Shown: piece after piece, positions 5,985-62,250 of the stretch
Layout of the letters: every line of letters begins with the position of its first letter
Numbering within the stretch: position 1 is the first letter of the stretch
Source: Asterias rubens
Lineage: Eukaryota
Length of the DNA: 64,000 nt
NCBI RefSeq assembly: GCF_902459465.1
Contig: NC_047066.1
Coordinates: 19,468,001 to 19,532,000, forward strand
Direction of reading: 5' to 3'
The notes under the pieces: model-generated
What the model was told of the DNA's origin: nothing
The model's input: the letters and a program-made list of their open reading frames with translations, nothing else
Databases searched by the model: none
Translations under genes and position numbers: made by a program

Positions 5985-8900
5985 TTATTTATTGCGACGC
6001 ATTTTCATTTCGGTCTTTACAATTTGTCTTCCCGGCCAAGTAAACCAACGAATACCGCGATACTCGATACCCGAAGCGTTCACTCGATGCGAATATTCGC
6101 CGTTCAGGTTCGATTCTACTGCACAGTCATCGAACCACCAACCTGCCTTGACGAGACCTGCACAGTTTTGGACATCGTTGTTGTCATTGTCGTTGTCATA
6201 GTTTGAGAACGTACGGCCATTCAACGACTCAAAAACACCACCTGATAATAAATAAAGGAAAATTTAAATAGGGACTTCGAGAAAATAGTCATTTTAAAAC
6301 AATAAGCCTGTACACAAAATTACAAACATACTTTGGTTATGCAACTAAGCCGTGGTTTTGGCATAATTTTATTCTCATTTGAAAGTCCAACCAACAACAA
6401 AGTGAAAGTCCATTGACATCAGTCGATATCGGAGAAAGTCGTGAAACTGATAGTTTCTTACCTTTGCAACCAATGAGCTCAATCCGCATTGTTGGCCATT
6501 TCTCATATGTTGTCGGTCTAATGCGAATGTACCGTGCTTGGATAGGCTCGTCGAACATGCTGGTAACGGGGGTTTCATGGTCCGTATTGCCATCGAATAC
6601 CTGCAAAGGAGCACATTTTCGTTTTTTTTGTAGTTTTGTTTATGTAACAACTATTAATAAAAGGTATAAAAAGCGTTCCCGAATGAAAAATGTTCGATCC
6701 GTCGACAAATGAAAAAAGAAAGTACATCAAGTGAATAATAGTTGTCGTTGCCCCCCCCCCTTAATTTTTGATATATTTATTGATTATTATTATTGTGGTG
6801 TGGGGGGGGGTACTTCTTATTCTGAAGGATATTATTCCATGCTCATTTATGTATATGTTGTGTTATCTGGCATGAGTTTGCTTGAAAATGCTTTCAGTTC
6901 AGTCTTCTGAACAAAACGATATCGTGTGCAACAAAACATTCTTTCCAACAAAAAGATATATCAAAAATATCATGGTATTGAAAGAACCACACATTCGCAT
7001 CACATTGCACTCACCTTTGCTGTATCCTGCGATGTCCCACCAACGTAGTACCATTGGCTCTGGTGAGAACTATACTCCACCGTGTACTTCTTTACCCACT
7101 CCCCATCGCCGGAAGCGTAACTTCCCTGCATAATAACACCTTCAACCTGGGTTTGTGTCTTTAGATCCACCTGAAACCATTCTGCTTTATCTGTTTCCGG
7201 GCACCAGTTGCCATCCACACTATTTAGCCGCCCATTACCCTCAGAACAATAAACCAACTCATTTTTGTAAACACTTGATGCTGTGATGCTCGAGTCAGGG
7301 ATGGTGTTGTCTTCCATCCCAAGACGTTGGTGACAAGTTCCATTGACTGAAAAAGCAAAACACGGTCGTTGTAAATAACGTCAAGAGTCATTTTTATTTT
7401 ATTCTTTTCACAAGGGAAGGTGGGACTCAAAAATGCAACCTTGCCTTCCAGTTCAAATTGAATGTTTAAGTTTTCACATAATTCTTATCTCAAAAATTAC
7501 GTATCATTTAAGCATATTTAGTAGTAGTTAATAAAAAGTCGAGTGTTCTCAAGATGTTGCACAGCTAGATGACAATTTCTTCGAAATTGTAGACACAATT
7601 TAACAATTTAATATTAAAAATGAAAATGAAAAAAAAAAAAAACCATGTGGCTCGGGTTTTATTTGGGCATATTCTGTGACAATGACATTAAACCATTTTA
7701 GCATTAGACCTAAGCAGTACAATCCAATATACCTGTAGGTTCAATTCCAGAGACTCCGATACTGAGGGCGTACTTGTCTCCTGTAATGCTGAAGGGTGAT
7801 GTCATTAGAGACATTTTCTGACTCTCTTCATCTGTGAGGTCCACACGGATTGTCCAATTAGATCCATTCTTAGTCAGCAGACGGAGTGCTTCATTTCCAA
7901 GCCAGAACACACTGCTGACATCACCAAATCCTTCTTTGTACTCGAGCCAAGTCCGAGTGAAGTTCACAGACCCGTCGTGGCGCCTTTGGAAAACCTTTGA
8001 ACAAAGTCAATAGAGTGCGCCCCATTTAAATGAGTCTGTGATGTTTAAATATTGCATTAGCAAAATATCTTGCCAAAATGGTTGACTGCTCGATCCCCTG
8101 TCGTTGTCATCAAGGAAAAATACATACTTGTGAATTTCTATTCACGAGTGAATGGACTGAGAATGGACTCCTGATGAAATGAATGCGATGTCGCGTAATT
8201 CACGAGCCTTTAATTGTGACGTCAGATGTACAGACTATCAGTAATGGTATCTAGATCTCTGCAAGCATAATTTGTTTAATTTTAGAGAAGAGAACATGAC
8301 CGGGAGGCATTAGCAGGGTGCTATTTGTTTCGAGTGCAGATGCAAATGTTCACCCAAGTAGCACCAAGGTTCAATTTTGTGCCCACACAGCTAAAATTCT
8401 ATGTGCACACCGTTTGCTTATTTTTCACTAATAATCTGGTTTGGTGGGATGTAGTTCAAGTGACATTTGTGTTTTGTTCTATTGTCATACACACTACGTA
8501 TACTTGATTGCCGGGACTGGTTGGTGCTATTTCAATCATTTGACCTACCAACCAGCCTTTGTCATCTTCCATATGACAGTAGACATCTTTCTTCTCTTTC
8601 ATGCCTGTATGTGACTGTATACTGATCGGGTAAACTCCACTGGTAGTGCTACCGGCATCAAACCAAGCTTGACAGTCGGCATGTTCTGAGAGAGAAAACA
8701 AAACACCACAAAACATCGATTTTTTTTAGGGACATTTTAGCTTGAATTGCATTGGGAATTGTTTTTTCCCAAAATGCATTTGGGAAGAATTATTTCATTT
8801 TAAAAGTTGGCCCGATATGTCAGGACCAAGGTGCACCCCCCCCCCTCAAGAAAAACGGGGGAGAAAGAAAAAAAGAGCAAAGAAGAAGAAGAAGAATACA

Positions 8901-25300: not shown

Positions 25301-28300
25301 ATCTTAGTCTTATTAATAAAGCGTGCTTCCATATAGTTAGCATTTTAGTCAGTTTGGATAAAGGAACCGACATTATGGAAGCATTGAGGGTTGTTGCTTG
25401 GTTAGGGCGTGTAAACAAAGGTTGACCTAAAGAAGCTCTCTGGACAGCAGTTTTTTTTTCAAATTGACTTACCAACCAGCCTTTGTCACCTTCCATATCA
25501 CAGTAGACCTCTTTCATGCCTATATGTGAGTTTATACCGATGTTGTAAGGTCCACTTGTAGTGCTACCGGCATCAAACCAACTTCGACAGTCGGCATGTT
25601 CTGGGAACAAAAAACAAGATGCAGTAGAGTTTACGGGAAACATTTGGCATACAAACAAAATAAGTACATTTCGGAAAAGTAAAAGCAACACATATAGACT
25701 GTACCTCGCGCAAATTCAAGTTCTTGTATGACATCACTTTTTTTTTACTTCACTTGTTAGCACGAGTTTCAAGGGAATCAAAATTCCTTCCCCAAACAGG
25801 GTAACGAAGAAGTTTACAAGTACAACATTCGCATAATCTCTACAGACATGGCAGAGCAATGACCAACTCAACCGTAGAGTAAAACTACACGTCTAGTTTA
25901 CCGTTTGACTTTATAGTAGTCATCGTGCTTTCTTCATGACAATCGAAATAGTCATGAATCTCCTCTACGTCATCGGTGAACAGCGGTTGGTCGGTGTAGT
26001 ATGGTTCATACGGTCTCTTGGGTGCCCGATTGACTCCCCCTGGTAGTATAACGGTACATGAGCATCGTTCTTGTTGGGTGAGAGGCATCACCCAGCGGAG
26101 TTTGCCTTCATGGTCAGGCTCTTGTTCAAAATAACACTTCTTCTTCGCTGTGACTGAGTGAAATAAAGAATATAGAAATTCTCGAAAAAATAGGCCTAAG
26201 TTTCTTTGAAACTGATGCATTACTAACTTGCATTCACTTGTTGTGCTTGAAAAAAAGTAAGAAAGTGTCGCAAACAAAACAATACTAGATAGAAAACCAG
26301 CCACTTTGAGAGGAAACCAAATGTAATGTCGTAATATTGAAGTGAAAAACACCCTTATCAAAAAACATCAGTGCAAAATTATATTGGTATTACTTAATTA
26401 AAAATTGAAGAAGGAAACAAGGACACGACGTTATTCAAAATGGATATAACCTGACCTTAATGGTACCTTAGGTCAGACGTACGGGCATATACAACAAACC
26501 AGTTACGTGATAGGCCTTGCCTTATGTTTTGTATTAAAAGGCCAGTAAACACAAGCCTGGTTGCCTATTGTTGAGAATTAGACACGGGCAAACTGAAGCA
26601 GAAAATTTCATTAGCGATTTTGAATAGGTACAGAAGCGACGAGTAGCTAAAAATAACACATTATAAATTAATATGCTGGCCAAATACATAAAGCTGCTAG
26701 CAGAAAATTCTGCTTTGCTAAGTAAGAAATAAAGGAGGTACCAATTGCAGCAATGGAAAAAGTACGGTATTCTGGCTGGTAATAATGTTTTGCTAAGCAC
26801 GAGGTTTCTGTGTTCAACAAGTTTTAATTGAAGGCCCATTAACACCAGCCTGGTTGCCTATTGTTAAGAATTAGACACGGGGGAAACTGAAGCAGAACAT
26901 CTTGTTATGCGATTGTGAATAGGTGCAGAAGCGAAGGGTAGCTAAAAATAACGCTTAATTAGATCCCAAAATCAAAATTGGCCCCATTTTCCATACTAAT
27001 TGTCTGTTCTCGTGTTTTTGGACCTACTTTGTAAAATAGTTATTAAATAAAGGGAGGGTCCTGATAGCTTTGTTCCGTTTTCAACAGACGGCTGGTTAGA
27101 AATAAAAACTTGTATTAGTAGCTTTCAGTTAAGATTATGCTGCTCTGATGATATCTTGAAATTTTCACATTTCTTGTGTCTGAATTGAAGTAAGGGGTGG
27201 TAGTGTAACTACTAATTAAAAGGGTAAACAAATTAAATTTGTAAAACGAAAACAATTGTGTTGAATTTACTTTAATATCATAATAAATGTATAGTTGAAG
27301 GAACACAACGCGTTTGGATTTGGATAAAGTTTAATAACAAAATATACTGCAGCTTCCGATAGTACAAAGCATTGTAGAGACGTTTCATTCCAAAGTAACT
27401 TGGTCATATATAGTTTTAAGTCCTTAAACTTGAATATTATCATTTGGGTGTTACTCAAATCAGTAACGCTTCCCAGATCGCGTATCCCTAGTGGAGTAAT
27501 GGTTTTGTATTCTTCCTGCGTGGACATAATTCGCTCCGGATTTTCGGCGACATCTCAAAAACGAGACCACCTTTTTAAATGATCACATAGATCACATGGT
27601 TTATACATCTACATTTATCTATGATTAAAACAATCGAGCGATTCTATGTTAATAAAAAAAACTCACTTTAGGTGCCTATTGCTCATGAGTGTTGCTCGGC
27701 CCTTATCCTTTTATTGATGACGTCATGGCTAATATTTTAACCACATTGCTTACTTTTGTTACTGAGTTTTTGTGAAAGACATCTTTTTCTCACTAAAATA
27801 TTTGAATTGAATTCGACATCTCAGATTTGGTCTCGAATTCAAGGCATCTGAAAGCACACAACTTGTGTGACAAGGGTGTTTTTTTTTTCTTCCATTATTC
27901 TCTCGCAACTTTGACGACCAAATATTGAGTCAAATTTTCACAGGTTTATATTGTATGCATATTATTTAGATACATCAAGAGAGAATACTGGTCTTTGAAC
28001 GTTACCAAAGGGTCCAGTGCACTGGACAAAGGCACTCCAGGGCCTTTAAAAAATGTCCTCAATTTTTTTTATCTGCCTTGTATATAGCCTAACAGTGGTA
28101 CTGCATATACAAGTTCGTGATAAATTTTTTCTCACCTTGGTGATGCACGCATTTTCCAAATTCATCCACCCGCATTCCAACACATCGGTTGAGCATATAA
28201 GTTTAAAAATTGCACATTTGTACGTTAGATCATTTGCAATTACCAAAATATGTAATGGCTTTAAAGTTAATGTTCTTACCTGCATGAATAATTATGAGCA

Positions 28301-29517: not shown

Positions 29518-32500
29518 TTAATTGCGACGCATTTTCATTTCTGTCTTTACGATCTGTCGTCCCGGCCAAATGGACGACCGAATACCGCGATACTCGGTAC
29601 CCGAAGCGTCCACTCGATGCGAATATTCGCCGTTCAGGTTCGATTCTACGGCGCAGTCATTAAACCACCAACCTGCTTTGACGAGACCTGTAAGGTTTTT
29701 AACGTCGTTGTTGTCATTGTCATTGTCATATGTTGAGAAATGACGGCCATTCAACGACTCAAAATAGCTAACTGAAAAAAGAAAAGGGGGAAAAGTAAAG
29801 AAAGTAAAAAAATGTGTTGATATTCATCAGTTTCAGAGTCATTTAAAGTCATTCACGATAATTTGATCAAATCAATCTAAATGGTACCCATGCAGGAAAT
29901 TGGATTTTGAAAAAGTTTCTCTGTTTAGCATCTTCATCATTGTATGTTCGTAAAAAAAAAAAATCGTAATGCGCGGCCCTATTATGTACTTAATTAAACA
30001 ACTGATATTGTATAAATCGTGAAAACAAAACTTATGTATAGCACATTACCTTTGCAACCAATGAGCTCAATCCGCATTGACGGCCATTCGTGATACGCTA
30101 TCGGTCTGATGCGAATGTACCGTGCTTGAACAGGCTCGTTGAACATGCTTGTAACGGGGGTGAAACTGTCGGTGTTGCCATCGAATTTCTGTTAAGAAAG
30201 TGAGCGGTGGTAACACTCAGTCGAGATGGCACATTCTTCACTGTTCTCTAAAAAAGTGCAATGCCCTGCGGAACCAAAGCCCTTGGATATCCTTAACTAG
30301 ACCGTAGGATCGGTATCTGGTCACAAAGTTGTGTAATTATTGTGTTTATAGGGTGAAATGTTCACTGCTTTGTGCACAAAATTGTACGGATTATACCGAC
30401 CACTCTCGTAGCAAGCGACCGGTTCTGAGGATTCTCACTTCCTTCCCCGCCAATACAGCCTGTTCTTTATCAAAGCTAAATGGGTAGCCAGTAACTAGTA
30501 AAGTCTTTTTGCAATTGTGTGGTTCTTGGGGTTAAGGCTTGTAATGTTTTGTTGATTTACCAACAACTTACAACACGAGACAAATGCAATGATCACGACC
30601 AAATCATTTAAAACAAAAAGTAAAGAAAAGTGAGATGCTCGGCCAACACGAGTCAAACTTAGCCGGCATCGCTGAATGAATTCTGTTTTCTGACTTTGGT
30701 GTTGGTTTTTCAAAACACGGTTAGAAAATAATTAGTGAACAATTATTGCATAAAAAGTATAGTTAAAAAAGATCAAATAAAATATAAAACAGCAGAACAA
30801 TTGAATAATTTGGAAAGCTAGGTGACAGCAAACTAATACCAGGTAAACTGTTATTGTGTGGTCTGAGCATTACCGGACACATGGTCACATTACCGAGAAT
30901 AATACATTCACCTGATCAGTCTGCTGCCACCTAGCGTTCAAAAAGTGCCCAATTGGAATTTAAAAAAATATTTGTTTTATTTAGTGTATTGGTCTTACTT
31001 GAGCAAGATCCTGGGATGGCCCACCACCAACGTAGTGCCACTTAAGCTGGTCGCAGCCGTACTGCACCTTGAATACCGTCACCCATCCAGTAGATCCTGA
31101 GGAACAAAAGCCCCCCTGTGTAATGACACCTACAACCTTTGTTTGTTGATTCAGTTCCTTCAGATCGACCTGAAACCAAGGTACATGCATGTCGTCAGTT
31201 TGAGGGCACCAACAACCTCCAGCGTGTAGCCGTCCCTTTTCATCCTGTCCATAATCATACGGATCCCAGGGTAATTCAGACCACCAATCACTCGATGCCG
31301 TGATGCTAGAGTCAGGGATGATCCAGTCTTCCATTCCAAGTGGCTGTCTACAGAGACCATTACCTGAACAACAAAGTATGAGTGGCATTTGTTTTATATA
31401 AATTGGTATACTGCTTTCAAAGTTCAGTTTTGGCCGGCACATTAATGAAACTAAACACAAACGGCGGTTTAGTCAGCAGTCTCATGGATATTATGAAAAC
31501 ATACGAGATTGGCGTTGCGTCTTTCTTCATTCAATGTTGACAAATCTGATCTCATTGCATTTAGCCTATTCAATACAGTTTCAGAAAGCCTACCATTTAT
31601 AACCCAAGGGCTGCCAATGCTGATGGTGTACTTGTCTTCTGTGATGCGGAAGGGCGATGCGGTCAGAGTTGTTTGCAAACCATTTACATCAGTGGGTTCC
31701 ACAATGACCTCCCAAATAGATCCATCATCTACATTGGTCAACAGACGGAGCGCTTCATTTCCAAGCCAGAACTCACCGCTGAGGTTCCCAAAGCCTACTT
31801 TGTATTCGAGCCAGTTTCGAATGAAGTTCATAGACCCATCCTGGCGTCTTTGGAAAACCTTGAAATAAAACCAACAGAGGGCGGCATATATGTAATACAT
31901 CAGCGATATCTTACCCAAGATGGAAGCGCCATAATATGATCAAATAGAACCACGTGTAAATATTATGATCAATAGAACCACGTGTAAAAGAAACAGCGAG
32001 ATCTCAATCGTGAAAAAAAGTAACTATTATACAAAACATTGCAGTTTGACAACTGGCGATGCTTATCTGAATTTACCTGTCTATACCGAGAGATGAACTA
32101 ACTGATAGAAACCTCACAGTCTTCTAAATGTACAGATTTTATTTCACCATTTCAGAGGCGGACCCATGAATATTGCACGGGTTGGTTTAGGTGTGTCAAA
32201 TAATGCTATAACTAAACGGCAGACACGGCTCGTTTATGTACGAGTCAATGGAGAATTCCCTTGAGACAGCGGACCAGCCTATGTTGTAAAAAAAATCCAG
32301 CGGTTAAACGACCCTGCCTTGTACTTGTTGGAATCGGTTTACTTACGTTGTTTTATGTGATAGCAAACGCTTTTTATCGCTCAAAGTACCCAATCCAATG
32401 AAATTATGTCCCTTTTAAAAGCTTTAATTTAAATAAACGTTTCCTGAAATCAGGAAAACTCCTGAGAAATCACATTCCTGTATTTTAGGAAATACCCATG

Positions 32501-33787
32501 TCGGGTTGACAACTTACCAACCAGCCTTCACCATTGTCCATATCACAGTAGACTTCTTTACTGTCTCCATTACTCCATAGTATAGCGGTGTATACTCCAC
32601 TACTAGTACTTCCAGAATCATACCAGGCCTGACAGTCTGCATGTTGATAACAAATTAAAGAAGTACGTTTATGTTTTTGCTGGAATTCCGTTGACTTTAA
32701 CGGTGTCTTAAACTACTTGGTCAATGACTGTGTTTGTGGTTTTTGTCTATTTGATAGTCAAATACAGTTTCTCCTGAAATAGCTAGCCCCCTATTGTGGA
32801 TTATCCCCTAAGTACCTTATTAACCTTCGATCACGAGTCAAAGCGTGCAATAGTCAATGTACGGGGGTAGATTTACATGACTGATGCTGATAACAACCGA
32901 GATCTCAGTTTTGAATCAAGTCTTACTGTTTCCTTTATTTCACACCAAAATTCAGCGAGCACCGCACATTTAAAAGAAAAACATTACAAACGAGACAATG
33001 TCGTGTACTGGTCCGAAACAGCGAATTCGGCTACAGCTACGAGATCAGCACGTCCGTCAGTGTCGAAGAATACGAAGCAGACGCGCGCGATCCAGCCGAG
33101 CTCTAGCCGAAGTCACAGTTTATATTATGCACAACAGAGTTAAGTAAAGAACCAACTCGACCATAGATTTAAAAATCTAAAACGTTACCCATGGTCTTTA
33201 TTGCAGTCGCTAGAGTACTTTCCTCATCAAGGCACCCGAAATAGTTGCGAACCACCTCGACGTCATGAGTGAACAGCGGCTGATCAGTGTAGTTTGGTCT
33301 ATACGGTCTCTCGGATGTCATTGTGTTTACTCCCCCTGGTAATAGAACGGTACATGAGCAGCGTTCTTTATGGGTAGTGCCCGGCATCACCCATCGAAAT
33401 TTGCCTTCATGGTCTGGCTCTTGCTCAAAATAGCATTTCTTTGCTGTGACTGGAAACAGGTACAAACATTGAACTGAATAACAGAATGTTATAGGTCAAT
33501 TGTAAACAAAAGTGTAGGCTCGCATAATGGTTAGTGAAATAACTTTTGCAGCAACGAACACTACCATTTCAGTTCACTTAAGTGGCACGAATAAGTAGCC
33601 TTTCTGAGCGAAAAAGCAGTCGGACGCGTGTAATATAACTTTTAAATTCAATTCCAAATATGAAAAAAAAAAACATTTTTGCAGAAACAACAACACCAAA
33701 CGTAATAATAATAGTTCATGTCTATGAGATGCTACTCTTACCTGCTTGAAGAAGGACCAAGAACACGACGGAACAGAGGATATCCAT
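29518..33787 (-). CDS. P5: most divergent complete FReD/discoidin paralog, about 482 aa
   Basis: Exons 33742-33787 ([15 protein letters not shown]), 33189-33449, 32518-32636 (acceptor inferred, shifted 9 nt), 31594-31858, 30999-31363, 30050-30188, 29518-29771 total 1449 nt, open frame. Confidence 0.82.
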
Positions 33788-35954
33788 GGCGGTCTCACAT
33801 CCAATGGCAACTGATGGGTTTGTCACAGAGACAGGCAAGGACTGTCTCGTAAACTACCCTATGTTAATTTTACTTGCTACTCATACCATTTTGGTTAGTT
33901 TGACGGCCAATCAATACCACTCTGATTGAAAGTTGATGAGAAAAAAAGGAAGCAACTGAAGTGGAACACTTCACGCGTCTATCTGGTAGTTTCTTTAAAT
34001 CTCAATACCTGCAATACCGATGGCCAGCTTGAAAAAATATATTTTTTTGCTCTACATGTTAGTATAGCTTTATCTGTTTCATATGGAATGGAGAACGAAA
34101 TTGGTGACAATCATTTAGCGGCCTCGCTCGATAACCACCGATCTATACCATTTTAGTTATCTCACACTCTTCTCCACGCTCCAAAAAGGAAACGTTTCAT
34201 GTCAAACGATCTTCCTGTAATATTATGGCTTTAAAATACATCAAAGATATACATTTACGTATAAATATTCACTATTTTGAGGAATAAATCGTGAAACCTT
34301 TACGTAAAATGTATATGTTTCATGACCATTCAAAGCCACCATACTATTTATATAAACATCCACTTTCTTAAAATATTAACATTTTCAAGAAGAGACTCAA
34401 ACACAATTGTTCTTTCGCGATTTCTATTTAATTTGCTGGACGTGTGGTGTCGTAGTAGTTGAAAAAGGGTGATAGTGAATAATAACAATAAATACATATC
34501 AAGTCATAAACAGCAATAGTACAGAAAAGTATAAGGCTAATAGATTTGAACGATAGCACGATATAGTGAGAGAGCTTTCCATCCCACCCAATCAAAATGA
34601 TTAAAATAACAACCAAAGTACTGCGCTGTGTAAAACTGCTTTTGCAATCTGACTACCTATGCTCACTGCCCTCGAGTGTTGATCAGCCTTTATTAAAAAA
34701 AGGCCCGCATAGCCTGCAAATTGTTGATCACTTAAAAAACGGAAGTTGGGCATCTGCATAATATCTCCTCAATGTCACTATAGAGCCCGGACGCAAATGC
34801 ATTAAGCTCAAGCACAATGCTTACTTATTTCTGCTAACCACAGCAGGGCACCAGACTGTTTATTAGAAAATAATAATAATAACAATCGTTATCTGTTTCT
34901 GCTAAGCAACAAATTGTGGTGCCAAGTAATTTGTAAATGTACGATAATTCGGTCTTGCTGTGCTGCATTGCTTGTATGCTGAGATGAGGTGCAGCTACTA
35001 AAAGGCTGTGCAGGCGATCCTGGGGAACAACTCCCGTAAAATTGCACGACAGTAAAATTACTGAGTGTCTCCCGTTATCAAACCCTACGTCAGTCAATCG
35101 TGCTGTTTCGTCACATAACCAATATCACATAAATTTCAAATTAAAACTAACATGAGATCGGGTTATTATAAACACATGAGTTCTAAGAGTGCTTTCTATA
35201 ATGTTACGCAAATGTGGATGAATATATTTTACTAATTTAGAATAATAATATTTAGACAAAGATTTAATAGACTACACTTGAAATAACATTGCTAAATACC
35301 AAATTTACAAAGATACCAATAATATTTCATACGAAGCTATTGTAAGATATTAATGGAAATCACTCGACTCTGTTAAAAATGTTAAGTTAATCTTGCTAAG
35401 TTTTCGCCAAAAACTATCTTCAGGTGATGTCTAAACTATCTAATAAATCCCCTAAACTACATAATCATCTAAACAGTAAATATTTTACTTACAGTTTTAA
35501 CTGGTTCAGTTACGTTTGGTAACTAGTGTATTCATAACTTTTGTATAGTAAGAGGTTCAACAGCTTCGGGTAGTGTAATGTATTTTGAGAAACATTTTAA
35601 AACTGCAAAATGTCACATTTTCTCCCCAAAACTTTGAATATAAGAAGCATTGCCGCATTAACGTTTCTCTGATTGTGTTTTCCTATTAGGGATTAGTCTC
35701 CCTGCGTGGACATAATTATTATTCGCTCCGGAGTTTTGGCGATGTCTCAAAAACGCGACCAATGAAATTTTACATTTTAGTTTTAATGTAAACAACTATA
35801 GGCCTACATTTTCTCAAGCTGCTCCTATACTATCAAAGGCTGCTGTATGAGTGATGACCAAACGTACACATACATGTTTTATGTAGGTACTTTCCTTTAA
35901 TTTAGTGTATGCTGATGAAGTCGAAACTTATCTCTCTTTTCGGTAATCACTTAC

Positions 35955-36692
35955 CAGCCAGCCTGTTGTACCAATCATTTCACAGTAGACGTCCAAAAGC
36001 TTTTGGCTGTTTGGGAGCGAAACGGTGTAGACACCACTCTCAGTATTACCTGCATCCAGCAAAGCCTGGCAGTCCGCAGGTTTGTCATCTAAAATCCAAA
36101 ATGTGTGAAACATAGACTTATATTACACAATATAGCAACAAACAACAGCAACGCAATAACCGACAGCAGCAGCAGCAACAACAACAGCATCAACAATAAC
36201 AATAACATAACAAAAAGCTAAAAAACACGTGTCTACTGATCACATAAAAACAATACGTAGAGATAAACTATAAAAATGCCCCTTTTTGAGGAAGCAAACT
36301 GATATCAAGGTAAAGAAATATTGTTGCCTCAAAAGCTTTGGTTGAATGCACCTTAAAAGCTTTTTAGTAAATTAACTAATCTGCATAAAGTCTTTTTCGT
36401 TTTTGTTTTAACCTAAATTGGTACCAAACCGAATTGCTGTTTTATTGGCTGTTAAATACTCACAGTGACAATTAAAATAGTCGTTAATCATCTCAACTTC
36501 GTCAGTAAACAGTGGGTGATCGGTGCGATAGGGTTCGATTGGTCTCTTGTGTGCCATTTTATTTAGCCCCCCCTGGTAATATAACGGCACAGGAGCAGCG
36601 TTCCTCATGACTGCCCGGCATCACCCAGTGGAGTTTGCCTGCATGGTTCGACTCTTGCACGAAATAGCACGTCTTTGGTGATCCATTGACAA
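35955..36692 (-). pseudogene. P6: remnant paralog, only exon 2 (36425-36692, +1 frameshift) and exon 3 (35955-36088) found
   Basis: KTCYFVQESNHAGKLHWVMPGSHEERCSCAVILPGG, then a frame change at a 7-base homopolymer (36567-36573) into LNKMAHKRPIEPYRTDHPLFTDEVE. Exon 3 reads DDKPADCQALLDAGNTESGVY..VYCEM..TGWL. No exon 1 or exons 4-7 were seen nearby. Confidence 0.7.
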
Positions 36693-37059
36693 CTGCAAAC
36701 AAGATTGCTTGGAAACAGTGTTAAACAAAATAAAATAGCTTCGGTGTTTTGAAAAATCACGTGGAGTAGAACTGAAGAAAATTCTCGCCGACAGTTCCCA
36801 AAATTTCATTTCGTGTATCAAAACATCTATTGACATCACGGTCGGGCAAAGCATTTTGAGTTATTCAGATGTCACAAATTATCTTTTTCTTACCCGAAAA
36901 TATTGCAACATTAGTGCCGGTTATAGGTGCATTATTATTAATACACGCCCGGGCAACGCATTTAAAGTTATTCAGAGATGCAAACAATTTCCCGCAAGTA
37001 TTACAAATGCAGTACATAATTACTTCTGGAAAGCAAAAAAAAAAGAACGTTAACAATAA

Positions 37060-43390: not shown

Positions 43391-43800
43391 GTGTGTGCAT
43401 GGTGGTTGGTGTTGTGATTTGTGTGTGTGTACGTGCGTGCATTAGGATATGTGTACAGGTTATGACTTAGAAGACTCAAAACTGTTCATGTGGATTGGTC
43501 TTGTGAACGCCCCCCCCCCCCCCTCCCCTGGTCTGTCCTTATATTGGACTATAGGCCAACACATTTGTCATGGCTAAAACAAAGTAAATGTTGTCTGAGC
43601 AATATTTCTAGAAGTACATGTACTCGTAGTATCAACTCCAAACTTGGTTTGTGGATTGGTCTTTGTTTTTGGATTGGTCTGTGGACCCCCCCCCCCCCCC
43701 CACCCCACCCAAGAAGCTTATTGCTTTTGGACCCTAGGCCAAACTTTTAGGTCATTATGACTAAAACAAAAAGAATGTTGCCTGCCTACCATACTACCCA

Positions 43801-45670
43801 CTCTGCCTTCCCTCACACCTTCTCACCTATCCTTCCCCACTCCGTTTTCCCAGCTCTGCCTTCCCTCACACCTTCTCACCTATCCTTCCCCACTCCGTTT
43901 TCCCAGCTCTGCCTTCCCTCACACCTTCTCACCTATCCTTCCCCACTCCGTTTTCCCAGCTCTGCCTTCCCTCACACCTTCTCACCTATCCTTCCCCACT
44001 CCGTTTTCCAAGCTCTGCCTTCCCTCACACCTTCTCACCTATCCTTCCCCACTCCGTTTTCCCAGCTCTGCCTTCCCTCACACCTTCTCACCTTCTCACC
44101 TATCCTTCCCCACTCCGTTTTCCCAGCTCTGCCTTCCCTCACACCTTCTCACCTATCCTTCCCCACTCCGTTTTCCCAGCTCTGCCTTCCCTCACACCTT
44201 CTCATCTATCCTTCCCCACTCCGTTTTCCAAGCTCTGCCTTCCCTCACACCTTCTCACCTATCCTTCCCCACTCCGTTTTCCCAGCTCTGCCTTCCCTCA
44301 CACCTTCTCACCTATCCTTCCCTACTCCGTTTTCCCAGCTCTGCCTTCCCTCACACCTTCTCACCTATCCTTCCCCACTCCGTTTTCCCAGCTCTGCCTT
44401 CCCTCACACCTTCTCACCTATCCTTCCCCACTCCGTTTTCCCAGCTCTGCCTTCCCTCACACCTTCTCACCTATCCTTCCCCACTCCGTTTTCCCAGCTC
44501 TGCCTTCCCTCGCACCTTCTCACCTATCCTTCCCCACTCTGTTTTCCCAGCTCTACCTTCCCTCACACCTTCTCACCTATCCTTCCCACTCCGTTTTCCC
44601 AGCTCTGCCTTCCCTCACACCTTCTCACCTATCCTTCCCCACTCCGTTTTCCCAGCTCTGCCTTCCCTCACACCTTCTCACCTATCCTTCCCCACTCCGT
44701 TTTCCCAGCTCTGCCTTCCCTCACACCTTCTAACCTATCCTTCCCCACTCCGTTTTCCCAGCTCTGCCTTCCCTCACACCTTCTCACCTATCCTTCCCCA
44801 CTCCGTTTTCCCAGCTCTGCCTTCCCTCACACCTTCTCACCTATCCTTCCCCACTCCGTTTTCCCAGCTCTGCCTTCCCTCACACCTTCTCACCTATCCT
44901 TCCCCACTCCGTTTTCCCAGCTCTGCCTTCCCTCACACCTCCTCACCTATCCTTCCCCACTCCGTTTTCCCAGCTCTGCCTTCCCTCACACCTTCTCAGC
45001 TATCCTTCCCTACTCCGTTTTCCCAGCTCTGCCTTCCCTCACACCTTCTCACCTATCCTTCCCCACTCCGTTTTCCCAGCTCTGCCTTCCCTCACACCTC
45101 CTCACCTATCCTTCCCCACTCCGTTTTCCCAGCTCTGCCTTCCCTCACACCTTCTCACCTATCCTTCCCCACTCCGTTTTCCCAGCTCTGCCTTCCCTCA
45201 CACCTCCTCACCTATCCTTCCCCACTCCGTTTTCCCAGCTCTGCCTTCCCTCACACCTCCTCACCTATCCTTCCCCACTCCGTTTTCCCAGCTCTGCCTT
45301 CCCTCACACCTTCTCACCTATCCTTCCCCACTCCGTTTTCCCAGCTCTGCCTTCCCTCACACCTTCTCACCTTCTCACCTATCCTTCCCCACTCCGTTTT
45401 CCCAGCTCTGCCTTCCCTCACACCTTCTCACCTATCCTTCCCCACTCCGTTTTCCCAGCTCTGCCTTCCCTCACACCTTCTCACCTATCCTTCCCCACTC
45501 CGTTTTCCCAGCTCTGCCTTCCCTCACACCTTCTCACCTATCCTTCCCCACTCCGTTTTCCCAGCTCTGCCTTCCCTCACACCTTCTCACCTATCCTTCC
45601 CCACTCCGTTTTCCCAGCTCTGCCTTCCCTCACACCTTCTCACCTATCCTTCCCCACTCATCTTTCCCAG
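43801..45670 (+). repeat. 53-bp minisatellite, about 35 near-identical copies, strongly pyrimidine-rich on +
   Basis: Unit CTCTGCCTTCCCTCACACCTTCTCACCTATCCTTCCCCACTCCGTTTTCCCAG. Confidence 0.97.
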
Positions 45671-45930
45671 CCTTCTACCCTACCCACTTTGACAATGATT
45701 AAATCTCCTTTAAAAACAAATGTAATGCAGAAAGGTTAGAAATGGGGGGGGGGTGGTTGTAGTGTGTATAAGTGTTTTCACCCTTTGGTCTTTGCAACCT
45801 ACATGGCAGAGTTACCGCAGAACAACACTGCACAACACTGGCTAAGATTATTGGTGAAAAAAAAACCAACACTGTTCTACATGTGTCAAATGTCAAGAAA
45901 CAGACTGGCTAGCAGGGCATTTGCGTTTAT

Positions 45931-55440: not shown

Positions 55441-55839
55441 TTTTATCCCAAATCTTTATCATCTGTAATTTATTTTTTGTCTAAATTTGATATATTATTT
55501 AAATTCGTATACATGTATTGTAAAACTCTTGAAATTCGGAATACATAATGGGCTCATTTTATACGACATGAGCCTTTTAAAATTTCTCTCGCGATGTCTT
55601 TATGTCTGCCCGACTGCGCTGCAACCATCGTTTCAATACTTTACGTATCTTATTTATTACCAAAAAACATAAATAAAAACACTCAAAAATAAAATGGTAC
55701 AATTTTAAAAACAAATACTTTTAGTCCCACTACTTAAGCATACTTTAACTAAAGCCAGGTACACTATTGCTAACAATTACACACGCAAGCACCCCCTACT
55801 GATCTACAGAAAAATAAAGTAAGGACTAAGAGAAGCTTT

Positions 55840-58800
55840 GAACACAGAAGAACTGAGAGTATGACCTTAGGTCACAGAAGGACTGAGAATATGCCCTCTG
55901 TTAACAGAAGGTTTAAGAGTGTGCCCTATGAACACAGAAGGACTAAGAGTGTGCCCTTCGATTACAGAAAGACTAAGATTGTGCCCTCTGATCACAGAAG
56001 GACTAAGAATGTGCTCTCTGAACACAGAGTGAATGAAAGTGTGCCCTCCGATTACAGAAGGACTAAGAGTGTGCCCTCTGATCACAGAAGGACTTAGAGT
56101 GTGCCCTCTGATTACAGAAGGACTAAGAGTGTGCCCTCTGATTACAGAAGGACTAAGAGTGTGCCCTCTGATCATAGGACTGGGAGTGTGCCCTCTGATT
56201 ACAGAAGAACTAAGAGTGTGCCCTCTGATCATAGGACTGGGAGTGTGCCCTCTAAACACAAAAGGACAGAGTTAGCCCTCTGAATACAATTGGATCAAGA
56301 TTGTGCTCTCTGAACACAGAAGGAATAAGATTGTGCCCTTTGAACCAATAAGGACTTAGAAATAGCCATCTTAAAACAGTCGACTTATATTGTCCCCTTC
56401 TGATTGGAGGACAAAAACTAACCATGTGCCCTCCAATCACAGAAGGGCAAAGAGTTAGCCCTCTGGACACAGACGGACTAAGAGTATTCCCGCTGGATAC
56501 AGAAGGACCAGGAGTGTGCCCTCTGAAACAGAACTAACCATGTGCCCTCTGATCACAGAACGACAAAGAGTTAGCCCTCTGGACACAGACGGACTAAGAG
56601 TGTTCCTGCTTGATACAGAAGGACTAAGAGTGTTCCCGCTGGATACAGAAGGACCAGGAGTGTGCCCTCTGAAACAAAACTAACCATGTGCCCTCTGATC
56701 ACAGAAGGAAAAAAAGTTAGCCCTCTGGACACAGACAGACTAAGAGTGTTCCCGCTGGACACAGATGGACCAAGAGTATGCCCTCTGACACAGAAGGACC
56801 AAGAGTTTGCCCCTCTGATCCCCTGACACAGAAGGACTGAGAATGTGCCCCTCTGATCTCAGAAGGACTGTCCTCTGACACCACAGAAGGACTAAAATTG
56901 TGCCTTCTGAACACAGAATGACATCGAGTTAGCCCTCTGGACACAGACAGACTGAGATCTGACCACAGAATGACTGAGAGGTTCCCTCTGAACACAGAAT
57001 GAACAAGAGTGAGCCCTCTGCAAAGAAGGGAATGAAATTATGCCCTTTAAACACAGAAGGACTGCCCTCTGACCACAGGAGGACTATGATTATACCCTCT
57101 GAACCCAGAAGGACTAATATTGTGCCCTCTAAACACTAAAGGACAAAGAGTTAGCCCTCTACTGAACACATAAGGACTAAGAGTTAGCCCTCTACTGAAC
57201 ACAGAAGGACTACAATTGTGCACTCCTTACATGGAATGACTGAGAGTGTGCCCTCTCAATACAGAAAGGCCAAGAATAAGCCCTCTGCGTGAAGGACTAA
57301 GAGTTGGCCCTCTGAACGCAGAAGGACTAAGATTGTGCGCTCTGAACACAGAAGGGCCAAGAGTTAGCCCTCTGCACGAAGGACTAAGATTGTGCCAACT
57401 GCACAGAAGTAATATTGCCCTCTGAACACCAAAGGACTGAGCTTAAGCCCTCTAATTACAGAAGGACTAAGAGTGTGCCCTCTGAACAAAGAGTGAACGA
57501 AAGTGTGCCCTCTGAACACAGAAGGTCCCAGATGGAGCCCTCTGAAAACAGAAGGACTAAGATTGTGTCCTCTAAACACAGAAGGACTAAGAGTAAGCCC
57601 TCTGATTACAGAAGGACTAAGAGTGTGCCCTCTGAACACAGAGTGAATGAAAGTGTGCCCTCTGAGCACAGAAGGTCCCACATGGAGCCCTCTGAAAACA
57701 GAAGGACTAAGATTGTGACTGAGAGTGTGCCATTTAAACACAGAAACGCCACAAGACAGCCCTCTGAACACAGAAGGACTAAGAGTTAGCCCTCTGAACA
57801 CAGAAGGCATAAGATTGTTCCCTCTGAACACAGAAGGAATAGGATTGTGCACTCTGAACACAGAAGGACCGATATTGTGCCCTCTTACGACAAAAGGACT
57901 GAGAGTGTGCCCTTTAAACACAGAAAGGCCACGAGACAGCCCTCTGAACACAGAAGGACTAAGAGTTAGCCCTCTGAACACAGAACGACTAAGATTGTGC
58001 CCTCTGAACACAGAAGAACTAAAAGTGTGCCCTCTGGACACAGACGGCCTAAGATTGTTCCCTCTGAACACAGAAGGCATAAGATTGTGCCCTCTGACCA
58101 CAGCAGCACTAAGATTGTGCGCTCTGATTACACTGTGCCATCTAAACACAGAGTGAATGAAAGTAAGCCCTGTGAACAGAAAAGGTCCCAGATGGAGCCC
58201 TCTGAAAACAGAAGGACCAAGATTGTGCCCTTTGAACACAGAGGAACTAAGATTGTGCCCTCTTAAGACAACAGGACTGAGAGTGTGCCCTTTAAACACA
58301 GAGAGGCAATGGGAGAGCCCTCTGAACACAGAAGGACTGAGATAGACCTCCGATTACTGAAGGAACACAGAGTAAATGAAAGTGTGCCCTCTGAACACAG
58401 AAGGTCCCAGATGGAGACCTTTGAAAACAGAAGGACTAAGATTGTGCCCTCTGAACACAGGAGAACTAAGATTGTGCCTTCTTAAGACAAAAGGACTGAG
58501 AGTGTGCCCTTTAAACACAGAAAGGCAACGAGACAGCCCTCTGAACACAGAAGGACTAAGAATTAGCCCTCTGAACACAGAACGACTAAGATTGTGCCCT
58601 CTGAACACAGAAGAACTAAAAGTGTGCCCTCTGGACACAGACGGCCTAAGATTGCTCCCTCTGAACACAGAAGGAATAAGATTGTGCACACTGATTACAG
58701 AAGGAATAAGATTGTGCCATCTGAAAACAGAAGGACTAAGATTGTGCCCTTTATGACAAAAGGACTGAGAGTAAGCCCTCTGAAAACAGAAGGACTGAGA

Positions 58801-61645
58801 TTGTGCCCTCTGAAAACAAAAGGACTAAAATTGCGCCCTCTTATGACAGAAGGACTGAGAGTAAGCCCTCTGAAAACAGAAGGACTAAGATTGTGCCATC
58901 AGCACAGAACTGAAATAATGCCCTCTGAATACAGAAGGACTGAGAGTGTGCCATCTAAACACAGAAACGCCACAAGACAGCCCTCTGAGCACAGAAGGAC
59001 TAAGAGTTAGCCCTCTGAACACAGAGTGAATGAAAGTGTGCCCTCTGAACACAGTAGGTCCCAGATGGAGCCCTCTAAAAACAGAAGGACTGAGAGTGTG
59101 CCCTCTGAAAACAGAAAGAGCACGAGACGGCCCTCTGAACACATAAGGACTAAGCGTTAGCCCTCTGGACAAAGACGGCCTAAGATTGTTCCCTCAGAAC
59201 ACAGAAGGTCTCACATGGAGCCCTCTGAAAACAGAATGACTGAGATTGAGCCCACTGAAAACAGAAGGACTAAGATTGTGCCATCAGCACAGAACTGATA
59301 TAATGCCCTCTGAATACAGAAGGACTGAGAGTGTGCCCTCTAAACACAGAAAGACCACACGACAGCCCTCTTAACACAGAAGGACTAAGAGTAAGTCCTC
59401 TGATTACAGAAGGACTAAGAGACTGCCTCTGAACACTGAAGGAATAAGAGTTAGCCCTCTGTACACAGAAGGACTAAGAGAGTAAACAGAGTAAATGAAA
59501 GTGTGCCCTCTGAACATAGATGGTCCCAGATGGAGCCTTCAAAAACAGAAGAACTTTCTGAACACAGAAATATCACGAGACAGTCCTCTGAACAAGCAGG
59601 ACTAAGATTGTGCCCTCTCATGACAAAAGGACCGAGAGTGTGCCCTTTAAACACAGAAAGGCCACAGGACAGCCCTCTGAACACAGAAGGACTAAGAGTT
59701 AGCCCTCCGATTACTGAAGGAACACAGAATGACTTAAAGTGTGCCCTGTGAACACAGATGGTCCCAGATGGAGCCCAGACGGACTAAGATAGTGCCCTCT
59801 GAAAACAGAAGGACTAAGATGGAGCCCTCTGAACACAGAAGGACTAAGATTTTGCCCTCTGAACACAGAAGGACTAAGAATGTGCCCTCTGACCACAGCA
59901 GGACTAAGATAGTGCCCTTCTGAACACAGGACTAAGATTGTGCCCTCTTACGACAAAAGGACCGAGAGTGTGCCCTTTAAAGACAGAAAGGCCAAGAGAC
60001 AGCCCTCTGAACACAGGACTAGAGATAGACCTCTGATTACTGAAGGACAAAGAATGTGCCCTCTGAACACAGAGTGAATGAAAGTGTGTCCTGTGAACAC
60101 TGAAGGTCCCAAATGGAGCCCTCTGAACACAGAGTGAATAAAAGTGTGCCCTGTGAACACACAAGGTCCCAAATGGAGCACTCTGAAAACAGAAGGACTA
60201 CGATTGTGCCCTCTGGACACAGAAGGAATAAGAGTTAGCCCTCTGATTACAGAAGGACTAAGAGTGTGCCCTTTTATGACAAAAGGACTGAGCGTTAGCC
60301 CTCTGAACACAGGACTAAGATTGTGCCACCTGCACAGGACTGAAATAATGTCCTCTGAACACAGGAGTACTGAGAATGTGCCTTCTGAACACAGAAAAGC
60401 CACGAGACAGCCCTCACACAGAAGGACCAAGATTGTGCCCTTTGAACACAGAAGGACTACGTGTTAGCCCTCTGGACACAGACGGCTTAAGATTGTTCCC
60501 TCTGAACACAGAGTAAATGAGAGTGTGCCCTCTGAACACAGAAGGTCCCAAATGGAGCATCTGAAGACAGGACTAAGATTGTGCCCTCTGAACACAGGAC
60601 TACACTGTGCCCTCTGATCAGGGTAGACTAAGATAGTCCCCTCTTATCACAGGACTCACCATGTCTGCTGTGATCACAGAAGGACTAAGAGTCTGCCCTC
60701 TGATCACAAAAGGACTAATAGAGTGCCCTTGTAACAACAAATGACTAAGAGTGTGCCTTTTGCACACAGAAGGTCCCAGATGGAGCCCTCTGAAAGCAGG
60801 ACTAAGATGTTGCCCTATGACAAAAATGTGCACAGAACTGAAATAATGCCCTCTGAACACAGAAGGACTGAGAGTGTGCCTTCTGCAAACAGAAGGACTA
60901 AGATTGTGCCCCCTGAGTACAGAAGGACAAAGAGTGTGCCCTCTGGACACAGACAGCCTAATATAATTCCCTCTGAACACAGAAGGAACACTATTGTGCC
61001 CTCTGACCACAGCAGGAGTAAGAGTGTGCGCTCTGAGTACAGAAGGACTAAGATTGTTCCCCCGAACACAGAAGGAACAAGATTGTGCCCTCTGACTACA
61101 TCAGGACTGAGAATCTGAACACAGAAAGTCCCAGATGGAGCCCTCTGAAAACAGGACTAAAACTGTGCCCTATGAACACAGGTGGACTAAGAGTCTGCCC
61201 TCTGATCACAAAAGGACTAATAGAGTGCCCTTGTAACAACAAATGACTAAGAGTGTGCCTTTTGCACACAGAAGGTCCCAGATGGAGCCCCCTGAAAGCA
61301 GGACTAAGATGTTGCCCTCTGACAAAAATGTGCACAGAACTGAAATAATGCCCTCTGAACACAGAAGGACTGAGAGTGTGCCTTCTGCAAACAGAAGGAC
61401 TAAGATTGTGCCCCCTGAGTACAGAAGGACAAAGAGTGTGCCCTCTGGACACAGACAGCCTAAGATTGTTCCCTCTGAACACAGAAGGAACACTATTGTG
61501 CCCTCTGACCACAGCAGGACTAAGATTGTGCCCCCTGATAACAGAAGGATCAAGAATATACCCTGTGATTACAGAAGTACTAAGAGTTTGCCCTATGATC
61601 ACAGAAGGACTGAGACTGTGCTCTCTGAACCCAGAAGGACCAAAG
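55840..61645 (+). repeat. 5.8-kb degenerate 30-bp minisatellite with higher-order duplications
   Basis: Consensus CCCTCTGAACACAGAAGGACTAAGAGTGTG (roughly 190 units) with recurring variant units; block near 60683-61100 recurs near 61184-61530. Confidence 0.95.
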
Positions 61646-62250
61646 AGTATGAAGAAAGTGAAGAATAAGAGTTTGAAAGAGTAGTTAAACGAAGAAAACA
61701 ATCTAAATTATAGGGGGGCAAAACTACTACAATAAAGTTACCAAATATACCATTACAAATTTAACATCACAGTAGAACAGAACATAAACTTGTCACTAAA
61801 CAAAAAAAATCTTATAAATACACCATCGCAAGCAAATTTTTGGCATCAGATTTTGTCTGATAATCATCCTGATCAGCTTAGTTTAATTAGCAGGGCCACC
61901 ACGTGCAGGTGCCAGGATACCAGCCCCACACGCTTTCGAGATCGTAAGGGCCATTGCACCTCCTTCCATTGGAGGGTCCGGTCCGCCACCTCAAGTTGCC
62001 CCAAGGTAGTCCCCTACTCTACTCACGCGGTCCCTAGCCGAAAAGACTAGGAACTCCTCCCGTTTAGCCAACCATTTGTGATAACACCGGCGCATCCTCA
62101 GGGGAGGAGCCCAAATGCACCTTTAAGATCAGCCACCCATTGTAGCGAGCCGGAAGTAGGACCCCACAAGCCACGTGCAAGTGTCCAGGTCCCTTTAGTT
62201 TAATTTTGGAGTTATCCAAAATTTACCGCACCTGCAATCAAACATTCCCT

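What the first reader, a model, noticed from the sequence alone, without database searches (positions are those of the whole stretch)
5985..26153. Mosaic ancestry of paralogs suggests gene conversion or unequal crossing-over
Seen by eye: P2 shares exon 1 and upstream DNA with P1. It shares the first half of exon 5 and its acceptor flank with P4 (ELVYCSEGNGRLNSVDG). It shares the second half of exon 5, exon 6 and nearly all of intron 6 with P3 (6243-6461 vs 12168-12386, roughly 95% identical, no less than the adjacent exon 7). P3 and P4 share a near-identical exon 2. No single tree fits all segments. Inference: segmental exchange reshuffles binding modules, as in other innate-immune clusters.
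Basis: inference. Interest (0 to 1): 0.7.

Follow-up and report, generated by a model that had tools for sequence, protein, structure and literature searches.

The report
Gene-conversion patchwork among tandem lectin genes
Neighbouring copies of a secreted lectin-like gene (a fibrinogen-type domain with a discoidin domain nested inside) have swapped short stretches of DNA, introns included, so the mosaic is real; this is ordinary gene conversion in a tandem gene family, and the copy at the centre of it is P3, not P2.

Summary
The window holds minus-strand, 7-exon paralogs: P1 (mostly left of the window), P2, P3, P4 and P5. All encode a fibrinogen-related domain split by a discoidin domain.

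Four short tracts of raised identity all involve P3:
- P1–P3: 1.08 kb, mid intron 3 to the end of exon 5, 97.2%, with flanks at 67–70%.
- P2–P3: about 450 bp, the last ~10–18 nt of intron 5, exon 6, intron 6 and the first ~65–85 nt of exon 7, ~97%, intron 213/220.
- P1–P3: the rest of exon 7, 98.3%.
- P3–P4: exon 2, 93%.

P3's nearest relative therefore changes from P4 to P1 to P2 to P1 along the gene. Supporting tests: quartet-site heterogeneity p=8e-13, PHI p<2e-4, a GENECONV-style permutation, and AU tests.

Internal patches with unlike flanks on both sides indicate gene conversion, not unequal crossing-over.

The claimed P4/P3 chimera inside P2 exon 5 is not supported. Only P4's branch lengthens there.

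P3 carries an in-frame stop. Independent contigs bridge two junctions. The direction of each transfer is unresolved.

This is a known kind of process.

The parts
5985..10093 (-). P2 (my A): 7 exons at 10093-10048, 9238-8984, 8685-8549, 7994-7733, 7346-7015, 6600-6462, 6241-5985. Intact 475-codon reading frame.
   Evidence: GT-AG models and translation. Pfam: Fibrinogen_C 4-125 (exons 3-4), F5_F8_type_C 1-127 (exons 5-6), Fibrinogen_C 144-219 (exon 7).
11913..17210 (-). P3 (my B): exons 2-7 at 17210-16959, 14492-14365, 14028-13770, 13514-13183, 12525-12387, 12166-11913. No exon 1 found. Intron 2 is 2.4 kb.
13207..13209 (-). In-frame TAA in P3 exon 5, where P1, P2, P4 and P5 have GGT (Gly). It lies about 8 nt beyond the 3' edge of the P1-P3 tract.
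   Evidence: Translation and site table. A 753-nt contig of run X1 with 0 mismatches covers it.
22324..26153 (-). P4 (my C): exons 2-7 at 26153-25902, 25600-25473, 25252-24991, 24785-24451, 23151-23013, 22580-22324. Open frame from exon 2.
363..1158 (-). P1 (my Z): exon 1 (1158-1113) and exon 2 (623-363). Exons 3-7 lie left of the window at G000:C5:19465515-19467852. Intact 472-codon frame.
29518..33449 (-). P5 (my D), used as an outgroup.
13217..14295 (-). Tract T1 in P3, near-identical to P1 (C5:19466530-19467645). It covers the 3' part of intron 3, exon 4, intron 4 and exon 5.
   Evidence: 1041/1071 = 97.2% identity against 67% and 70% in the 100-nt flanks. Intron 4 is 97.6%. GENECONV-like global p<2e-4.
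12083..12543 (-). Tract T2 in P3 (minimum 12100-12534). It covers the tail of intron 5, exon 6, intron 6 and the first ~65-85 nt of exon 7. P2-like here, while P3's flanks are P1-like.
   Evidence: Site-pattern run with about 90 A=B sites plus 7 shared indels, against 7 Z=B and 6 Z=A sites. Per-segment identities.
6158..6618 (-). Tract T2 in P2 (minimum 6175-6609), the partner of P3 12083-12543.
11910..12082 (-). Tract T3 in P3: the rest of exon 7, P1-like (174/177 = 98.3%, shared 3-nt deletion), against 93.8% to P2.
   Evidence: AU rejects P2-P3 and P3-P4 sisterhood here (p about 0.01).
16948..17233 (-). Tract T4 in P3: exon 2 with about 23 nt upstream and about 11 nt downstream, P4-like.
   Evidence: BLAST 91.4% over 291 nt. 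Exon 93.1%, dS 0.15 against 0.66-1.29 for the other pairs among P1-P4. Quartet sites 11:4:1.
25891..26178 (-). Tract T4 partner in P4.
7015..7346 (-). P2 exon 5, claimed to be a P4/P3 chimera. The claim is not supported.

Best explanation
A tandem array of at least six fibrinogen-related/discoidin paralogs has undergone repeated short-tract, non-reciprocal exchange between non-allelic copies (interlocus gene conversion). This probably happens through strand invasion of a neighbouring copy during repair of a break. Four tracts of 0.17-1.08 kb are visible, and all of them involve P3. What is shown: the tracts, their edges, and the incongruence between segments. What is inferred: the mechanism, the timing (about 2-3% divergence for the tracts with P1 and P2, about 7-9% for exon 2), and any functional consequence. 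The direction of each transfer is not resolved. P2's exon 5 is not a chimera; the second half of P4's exon 5 has simply diverged about three times faster.
For: Introns, not only exons, are near-identical inside the tracts and unalignable or 50-70% identical just outside them, for the same gene pair: intron 6 of P2/P3 213/220; intron 4 of P1/P3 97.6%; T1 97.2% against flanks of 67-70%. Synonymous divergence for one pair varies up to a hundred-fold along the gene, for example P1-P3 dS 1.29 in exon 2 and 0.00-0.06 in exons 4-5, and P2-P3 0.00 in exon 6 and 0.43-0.70 elsewhere. Quartet-informative sites switch from BC|ZA (exon 2, 11:4:1) to BZ|AC (exons 4-5, 45:3:4), to BA|ZC (exon 6, 9:0:0), to BZ|AC (exon 7b, 8:2:0); heterogeneity p=8e-13, Monte-Carlo p<=5e-5. 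PHI is 0.375 against a permuted mean of 0.431, p<2e-4. My GENECONV-style permutation gives global p of 0, 0 and 0.007 for the three largest fragments. AU tests reject the alternative sister of P3 in exon 2, exon 4, exon 5, exon 6 plus 7a, and exon 7b (p 0.045 down to 3e-7). T2 is bounded on both sides within about 10-18 nt by sequence where P3 resembles P1 and not P2. No closer donor exists elsewhere in the genome for the two most divergent pieces tested. Independent contigs support the structure: X1 has a 753-nt contig with 0 mismatches from P3 exon 5 through its unique intron 5 into exon 6; X4 has a 145-nt contig with 0 mismatches across the exon-7 junction; X1 shows both the P2-type and P3-type intron-6 alleles at about equal depth.
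Against: Only one genome was analysed, so neither direction nor non-reciprocity is shown. AU p-values on the short exonic segments are modest (0.02-0.05); the strength comes from the introns. T4 is an exon-sized island without intron support, so it is the weakest tract. X1 may be the sample the assembly came from, and Logan contigs are short. The statistical tests are my own implementations, not the published programs.
Confidence: 0.8

Rival explanations
1. Unequal crossing-over between misaligned neighbours produced hybrid genes: the 5' part comes from one parent and the 3' part from another, with a single junction each.
For: The array itself must have grown by tandem duplication. P3 combines a P4-like exon 2 with P1-like exons 4-5. 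A lone exon-2/3 fragment sits at 35892-36705.
Against: Every tract is an internal patch with unlike sequence on both sides in both partners. Between the P4-like exon 2 and the P1-like tract lie 2.4 kb of unique intron and an exon 3 that resembles no copy in particular (81-84%). P2 sits physically between P1 and P3. No intergenic homology accompanies any tract.
Confidence: 0.08
2. There was no exchange. Differences in selective constraint or lineage-specific rate along the gene mimic a mosaic.
For: This does explain the apparent switch inside P2 exon 5. Three-point branch lengths give P2 0.056 then 0.069, and P4 0.066 then 0.208 between the two halves. AU cannot reject either placement of P2 there.
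Against: It cannot explain 97% identical introns next to unalignable ones in the same pair, nor dS of 0.00-0.06 beside 0.4-1.3.
Confidence: 0.04
3. Assembly or polishing artefact: reads of one paralog were used to correct another, or haplotypes were inserted in tandem.
For: Paralogs at 97% identity over 0.5-1 kb can mislead short-read polishing. One P3 base (14203 C) is seen in none of the three runs that cover it (X1, X3, X4). No contig of X1, X3 or X8 shows eight of P3's own exon-5 alleles.
Against: The partners differ at about 3% inside each tract, and the private changes are split evenly between them (7 against 6 in T2). Zero-mismatch contigs bridge two junctions in two runs carrying different organism codes. 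Both intron-6 allele sets occur at about equal depth in X1. P3-type exon-5 alleles are present in X4.
Confidence: 0.05

Closest known systems
Gene conversion among fibrinogen-related protein (FREP) genes of the snail Biomphalaria glabrata
   Same: Both involve fibrinogen-domain lectin-like genes in multi-copy families, in which variant sequences derive from germ-line sources by gene conversion and point mutation (PMC7588048, Introduction, citing Zhang et al. 2004).
   Different: FREPs carry IgSF domains upstream of the fibrinogen domain, whereas here a discoidin domain is nested inside it. The snail case is reported as somatic variation within one animal; here I see germ-line tracts fixed or segregating in a genome assembly. 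No organism identity or immune role was established here.
Sp185/333 (SpTransformer) gene clusters of the purple sea urchin
   Same: Both are tightly clustered immune-type paralogs with mosaic sequence patterns attributed to recombination, gene conversion and duplication (PMC3091723 and PMC5103432, titles and abstracts).
   Different: The protein family is unrelated. There the mosaic is made of presence or absence of 'elements' within one exon and is associated with flanking microsatellites. Here homologous tracts are replaced across exon-intron boundaries, and no repeat was seen at the tract edges.
Pseudogene-involving conversion (chicken immunoglobulin V pseudogene donors; human CYP21A2/CYP21A1P). 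From my own knowledge, not checked here.
   Same: A copy with a disabling stop (P3) exchanges short tracts with intact neighbours.
   Different: Direction is unknown here. P3 may be only an acceptor, and nothing shows programmed or somatic use.

Membership tests
Interlocus (ectopic) gene conversion in a tandem gene family | A tract of raised identity bounded on both sides by clearly lower identity between the same two copies | tested here: met
   T1 is 97.2% against flanks of 67% and 70%. T2 has edges at P3 12544/12534 and 12100/12082, from the site patterns.
Interlocus (ectopic) gene conversion in a tandem gene family | The raised identity extends to sites free of protein-level selection (introns, synonymous sites) | tested here: met
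   Intron 6 is 213/220 and intron 4 is 97.6%. dS is 0.00-0.06 inside the tracts against 0.4-1.3 outside. T4 (exon 2) has only dS support (0.15).
Interlocus (ectopic) gene conversion in a tandem gene family | Statistically significant phylogenetic incongruence between adjacent segments | tested here: met
   Quartet heterogeneity p=8e-13. PHI p<2e-4. Permutation fragments significant. AU tests reject the alternatives.
Interlocus (ectopic) gene conversion in a tandem gene family | Non-reciprocal transfer with an identifiable donor and acceptor | tested here: inconclusive
   The flank-continuity argument for T2 weakly favours P3 to P2: P1-P3 is 70.5% and P1-P2 is 57.6% in the intron-5 flank, against 75-76% for P1 to the patch intron. 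However, P2's intron 3 is also alignable to P1/P3. X1 contigs hint at a P1 to P3 transfer over 13217-13504.
Unequal crossing-over hybrid gene | A single junction, with each side collinear with a different parent out into the flanking DNA | tested here: not met
   At least five switches occur along P3. There is no intergenic or intron-2 homology to either putative parent.
Fibrinogen-related domain protein (Pfam PF00147) with F5/8 type C discoidin domain (PF00754) | Significant profile matches above the curated cut-offs | tested here: met
   Exon 4: 74.2 bits. Exon 7: 60.2 bits (cut-off 22). Exon 5: 56.7 bits and exon 6: 34.8 bits (cut-off 28.2). The discoidin domain sits between Fibrinogen_C profile positions 125 and 144. 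Exon 3 alone scores 21.4, just under the cut-off.
Somatically diversified FREP-like immune receptor | Variant sequences in different cells of one animal; induction by pathogens | not testable with these tools
   Only contig-level public data were available.

The most novel reading that the evidence does not exclude
P3 is a stop-bearing 'hub' copy that keeps exchanging cassettes with its intact neighbours P1, P2 and P4, and the exchange is still segregating in the population. In runs X1 and X3, the P3 stretch 13217-13504 appears identical to P1 at all Z/B-distinguishing sites (9 in X1; 7 over the 13289-13504 that X3's contig covers) at about twice single-copy depth, while the adjacent 753 nt of P3 intron 5 match the reference with 0 mismatches. 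A silent copy would then act as a reservoir or relay that moves discoidin and fibrinogen sub-modules between expressed lectin genes.
Probability: 0.2. Interest if true: 0.6.

Novelty: new member of a known kind. Interest (0 to 1): 0.38.

Why it matters
The cluster is a clean, intron-anchored example of concerted evolution in an invertebrate lectin-like family. It has a practical consequence: trees, orthology calls and dN/dS scans on these genes are unreliable unless they are done tract by tract. It also corrects the picture of which copy is mosaic. If the hub copy P3 really is a pseudogene that trades cassettes with expressed neighbours, and if the tracts are polymorphic, the locus would be a tractable place to measure germ-line conversion rates and their effect on a binding-domain repertoire. 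On the present evidence it is an ordinary process in a family whose domain architecture is the more unusual feature.

Tried and rejected
1. Standard-bootstrap IQ-TREE runs timed out. I used UFBoot and AU tests instead.
2. I searched for an exon 1 for P3, P4 and P5 with blastn-short, nhmmer and local alignment of 1.5-2.3 kb upstream. Nothing beyond chance was found, so the exon-1 'sharing' of P1 and P2 cannot be placed on a tree.
3. The argument 'P2's introns are unalignable to P1, so the patch must be native to P3' was weakened. P2's intron 3 does retain blocks of roughly 70% identity (by eye) with P1/P3.
4. I looked for outside donors for P4's fast-evolving second half of exon 5 and for P1's divergent exon 6 and intron 6. 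None in the genome is closer than the cluster members.
5. An RNA-like contig in X8 joins a P3/P2-type exon 6 to an exon 7 with the P1-type 3-nt deletion. About 65 nt around that splice junction are identical in P1, P2 and P3, so the contig may be chimeric and I draw nothing from it beyond 'intron 6 is spliced out'.
6. A full-length protein search for orthologues and organism identity was not run.
7. Two literature searches found no description of a discoidin domain nested in a fibrinogen-related domain; this was not exhaustive.
Full report
**What is there.** The window is G000:C5:19468001-19532000 of a 418-Mb genome. Between about -12.4 kb (left of the window) and 36.7 kb lies a head-to-tail array on the minus strand. 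It contains an outlying copy Y, then P1 (my Z), P2 (A), P3 (B), P4 (C) and P5 (D), and a lone exon-2/3 fragment. I fetched the DNA to the left of the window.

I built GT-AG models by alignment. P2 has seven exons and an intact 475-codon frame. P1 is intact at 472 codons. P4 and P5 are open from exon 2. P3 has an in-frame TAA at 13207-13209.

Pfam places Fibrinogen_C positions 4-125 on exons 3-4, a complete F5/8 type C discoidin domain on exons 5-6, and Fibrinogen_C 144-219 on exon 7. Exon 2 has no Pfam match. My exon coordinates agree with the first-stage notes on the same window.

**Checking the observation.** The shared peptide, the 96.8% identical intron 6 of P2 and P3, the exon 1 and upstream homology restricted to P1 and P2 (38/46 nt; upstream local alignment z=13), and P3-P4 as the closest pair in exon 2 (93.1%) are all real.

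The statement that P2 shares the second half of exon 5 with P3 is not real. P2-P3 identity is 77.2% in the first half and 79.3% in the second.

Adding P1 changes the picture. P1 and P3 align without interruption over 1.37 kb, covering exon 3, intron 3, exon 4, intron 4 and exon 5.

Inside that alignment there is a sharply bounded core, P3 13217-14295:
- It is 97.2% identical (1041/1071).
- Intron 4 is 97.6% identical, and the 3' part of intron 3 is almost identical.
- The 100 nt on either side are 67% and 70% identical.

In the 3' part of the gene, a three-way alignment of P1, P2 and P3 gives a clean run of site patterns:
- Upstream of P3 12544, P3 resembles P1 at 70.5%, and P2 is essentially unalignable.
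- From 12534 to 12100, P3 equals P2: about 90 sites and seven shared indels, against 7 and 6 private changes.
- From 12082 to the stop codon, P3 equals P1: nine consecutive sites and a shared 3-nt deletion, 174/177 identical.

Along P3 the nearest relative is therefore P4 (exon 2), nobody in particular (exon 3), P1, P2, and P1 again.

**Is it more than chance or constraint?**
- Synonymous divergence for a single pair varies enormously along the gene. P1-P3 dS is 1.29 in exon 2 and 0.00-0.06 in exons 4-5. P2-P3 dS is 0.00 in exon 6 and 0.43-0.70 in exons 2, 3 and 5.
- Quartet-informative sites for P1/P2/P3/P4 are 11:4:1 for P3+P4 in exon 2, 45:3:4 for P3+P1 in exons 4-5, 9:0:0 for P3+P2 in exon 6, and 8:2:0 for P3+P1 in the rest of exon 7. 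Heterogeneity p=8e-13, Monte-Carlo p<=5e-5.
- A pairwise-homoplasy (PHI) statistic is 8 sd below its permutation mean, p<2e-4.
- A GENECONV-style maximal-fragment permutation finds three globally significant fragments: P1-P3, P3-P4 and P2-P3.
- Segment trees place P3 with P4 (UFBoot 93), with P1 (93, 86, 91) or with P2 (65-73).
- AU tests reject the competing sister in each segment, with p from 0.045 to 3e-7.
- An intron-by-intron local-alignment map shows strong homology only for P1-P3 in introns 3 and 4 and for P2-P3 in intron 6.

These are my own implementations of the tests, not the published programs.

**P2 exon 5.** With P1 and P3 always sisters there, the unrooted four-taxon tree is the same in both halves. 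The question is therefore only one of branch lengths or rooting.
- Three-point branch lengths for P2, P4 and P1 are 0.056, 0.066 and 0.152 in the first half. In the second half they are 0.069, 0.208 and 0.109. Only P4's branch jumps, and it does so together with three P4-specific indels.
- With P5 and Y as outgroups, AU tests cannot reject either (P2,P4) or (P2,P1,P3) in either half.
- No outside donor for P4's divergent half exists in the genome.

I therefore read this as fast divergence of P4 in the second half of exon 5, which encodes part of the discoidin domain, and not as a chimera in P2.

**Mechanism.** All four tracts are internal patches of 0.17-1.08 kb. They cross exon-intron boundaries and have unlike sequence on both sides in both partners. 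That is the signature of short-tract gene conversion (or the formally equivalent double crossover).

Unequal crossing-over would give one junction per hybrid and collinearity out into the flanks. Instead:
- P3's 2.4-kb intron 2 is unique apart from a ~610-bp interspersed repeat.
- Exon 3 is equidistant from all copies.
- P2 lies physically between P1 and P3.

T2 and T3 abut within 18 nt and have similar divergence (about 3% and 1.7%). That would fit one repair event with a template switch, but this is speculation.

**Direction.** This is unresolved.
- For T2, P1 resembles the patch intron at 75-76%. That matches P1-P3 in the intron-5 flank (70.5%) better than P1-P2 (57.6%), which hints that the patch is native to P3 and was copied into P2.
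- However, the flank is short, and P2's intron 3 shows that native P2 introns can still be alignable to P1.
- For the P1-P3 tract, public contigs hint at P1 to P3 transfer (see the next section).

**Independent data.** All four runs laid are Logan contigs, and the organism names are coded.
- In X1, a 753-nt contig with no mismatch runs from P3 exon 5, including the TAA, through the unique intron 5 and 31 nt into exon 6. It crosses the 5' edge of T2.
- In X4, which carries a different organism code, a 145-nt contig with no mismatch crosses the T2/T3 junction in exon 7.
- At the four intron-6 sites that distinguish P2 from P3, X1 shows both alleles at about equal depth (94 of 184.7).

These results argue against a polishing artefact, although X1 may be the assembly's own sample.

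There is also an unexpected result. The only X1 contig over P3 13217-13504 carries the P1 allele at all nine P1/P3-distinguishing sites, at about twice the depth of the neighbouring single-copy contigs. It ends exactly at the next distinguishing sites on either side. X3 behaves alike over the part of the stretch its contig covers (13289-13504, seven of the nine sites). P3-type alleles are seen in X4.

This suggests a segregating, very recent P1 to P3 tract. But contig depth is a weak measure and holes prove nothing, so I keep it as a lead.

**Comparison and verdict.** Interlocus gene conversion in clustered immune-type gene families is well known. For snail FREPs see PMC7588048. The sea-urchin Sp185/333 clusters (PMC3091723, PMC5103432) are the nearest analogy for mosaic clustered genes.

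This locus is a new, well-resolved instance in a family with an unusual nested-domain architecture. It is not a new kind of process. The details (which gene is mosaic, the exon-5 switch, unequal crossing-over) do not.

Noticed in passing
window 13217-14295 (against P1 at C5:19466530-19467645): Inside the P1-P3 tract the exons differ more than the introns: 23/558 against 8/522 substitutions, Fisher p=0.011. Most exon changes are non-synonymous. Five of them fall within seven bases (13425-13431) in exon 5 (discoidin), EKYSG against EAFPG, and run X4 shows several variants there. This may be diversifying selection on a binding loop.
   Followed up: partly
window 15042-15650 and 20359-20943: A ~610-bp interspersed repeat sits in P3 intron 2. 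At least 40 copies at 91-97% identity (most 94-97%) are spread over many chromosomes (1444 first-look candidates), and an 85% copy lies in the P3-P4 spacer. It is probably a young non-autonomous transposon.
   Followed up: partly
window 330, 8949, 25873, 33162 (minus strand): A conserved intronic motif of the form ...CTAYGGTYGAGTTGG lies about 10-20 nt downstream of exon 2 in P1, P2, P4 and P5. It is absent from P3, whose similarity to the other copies stops about 11-15 nt after the donor site.
   Followed up: no
window 1260-3928: A 1334-bp unit is duplicated in tandem at 98.8% identity, upstream of P1 exon 1. Each copy contains a CT-rich low-complexity stretch.
   Followed up: no
window 363-623: P1 exon 2 is the most divergent exon 2 of the cluster: 67-73% to every copy, dS above 1.1. 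It is further from P2-P4 than the outgroup copies are, although P1 exon 1 is 83% identical to P2's and P1 exons 3-7 are close to the others.
   Followed up: partly
window 14077 (P3 intron 3): P3 has a private 45-nt deletion inside the P1-P3 tract. The segment is present in P1, P2 and P4, so the deletion arose after the exchange.
   Followed up: yes
window 32645-32654: P5 has lost the AG acceptor of exon 3 (the aligned position reads TC). An in-frame AG lies 9 nt downstream and could replace it.
   Followed up: no
window 35892-36705: A lone exon-2-like and exon-3-like fragment of the family lies here, with no exons 4-7 detected nearby.
   Followed up: no
window 43797-45671; 55839-61648; 62246-62763: Three minisatellites: a 53-bp unit x35 (96% matches, strongly C-rich strand), a 30-bp unit x196 spanning 5.8 kb (65% matches), and a 20-bp unit x26.
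   Followed up: no
window 11932-12497 (run X8): An RNA-like contig lacks exactly intron 6 (joint 12164 to 12385, GT..AG on the minus strand), so genes of this family are transcribed and spliced as modelled. Which paralog it comes from cannot be told.
   Followed up: partly
exons 6-7 of all copies (e.g. window 5985-6600, 29518-30188): dS to the outgroup copy P5 is 0.30-0.57 in exons 6-7 but 0.5-2.8 in exons 2-5. The 3' end of the whole cluster looks homogenised by older exchanges.
   Followed up: partly
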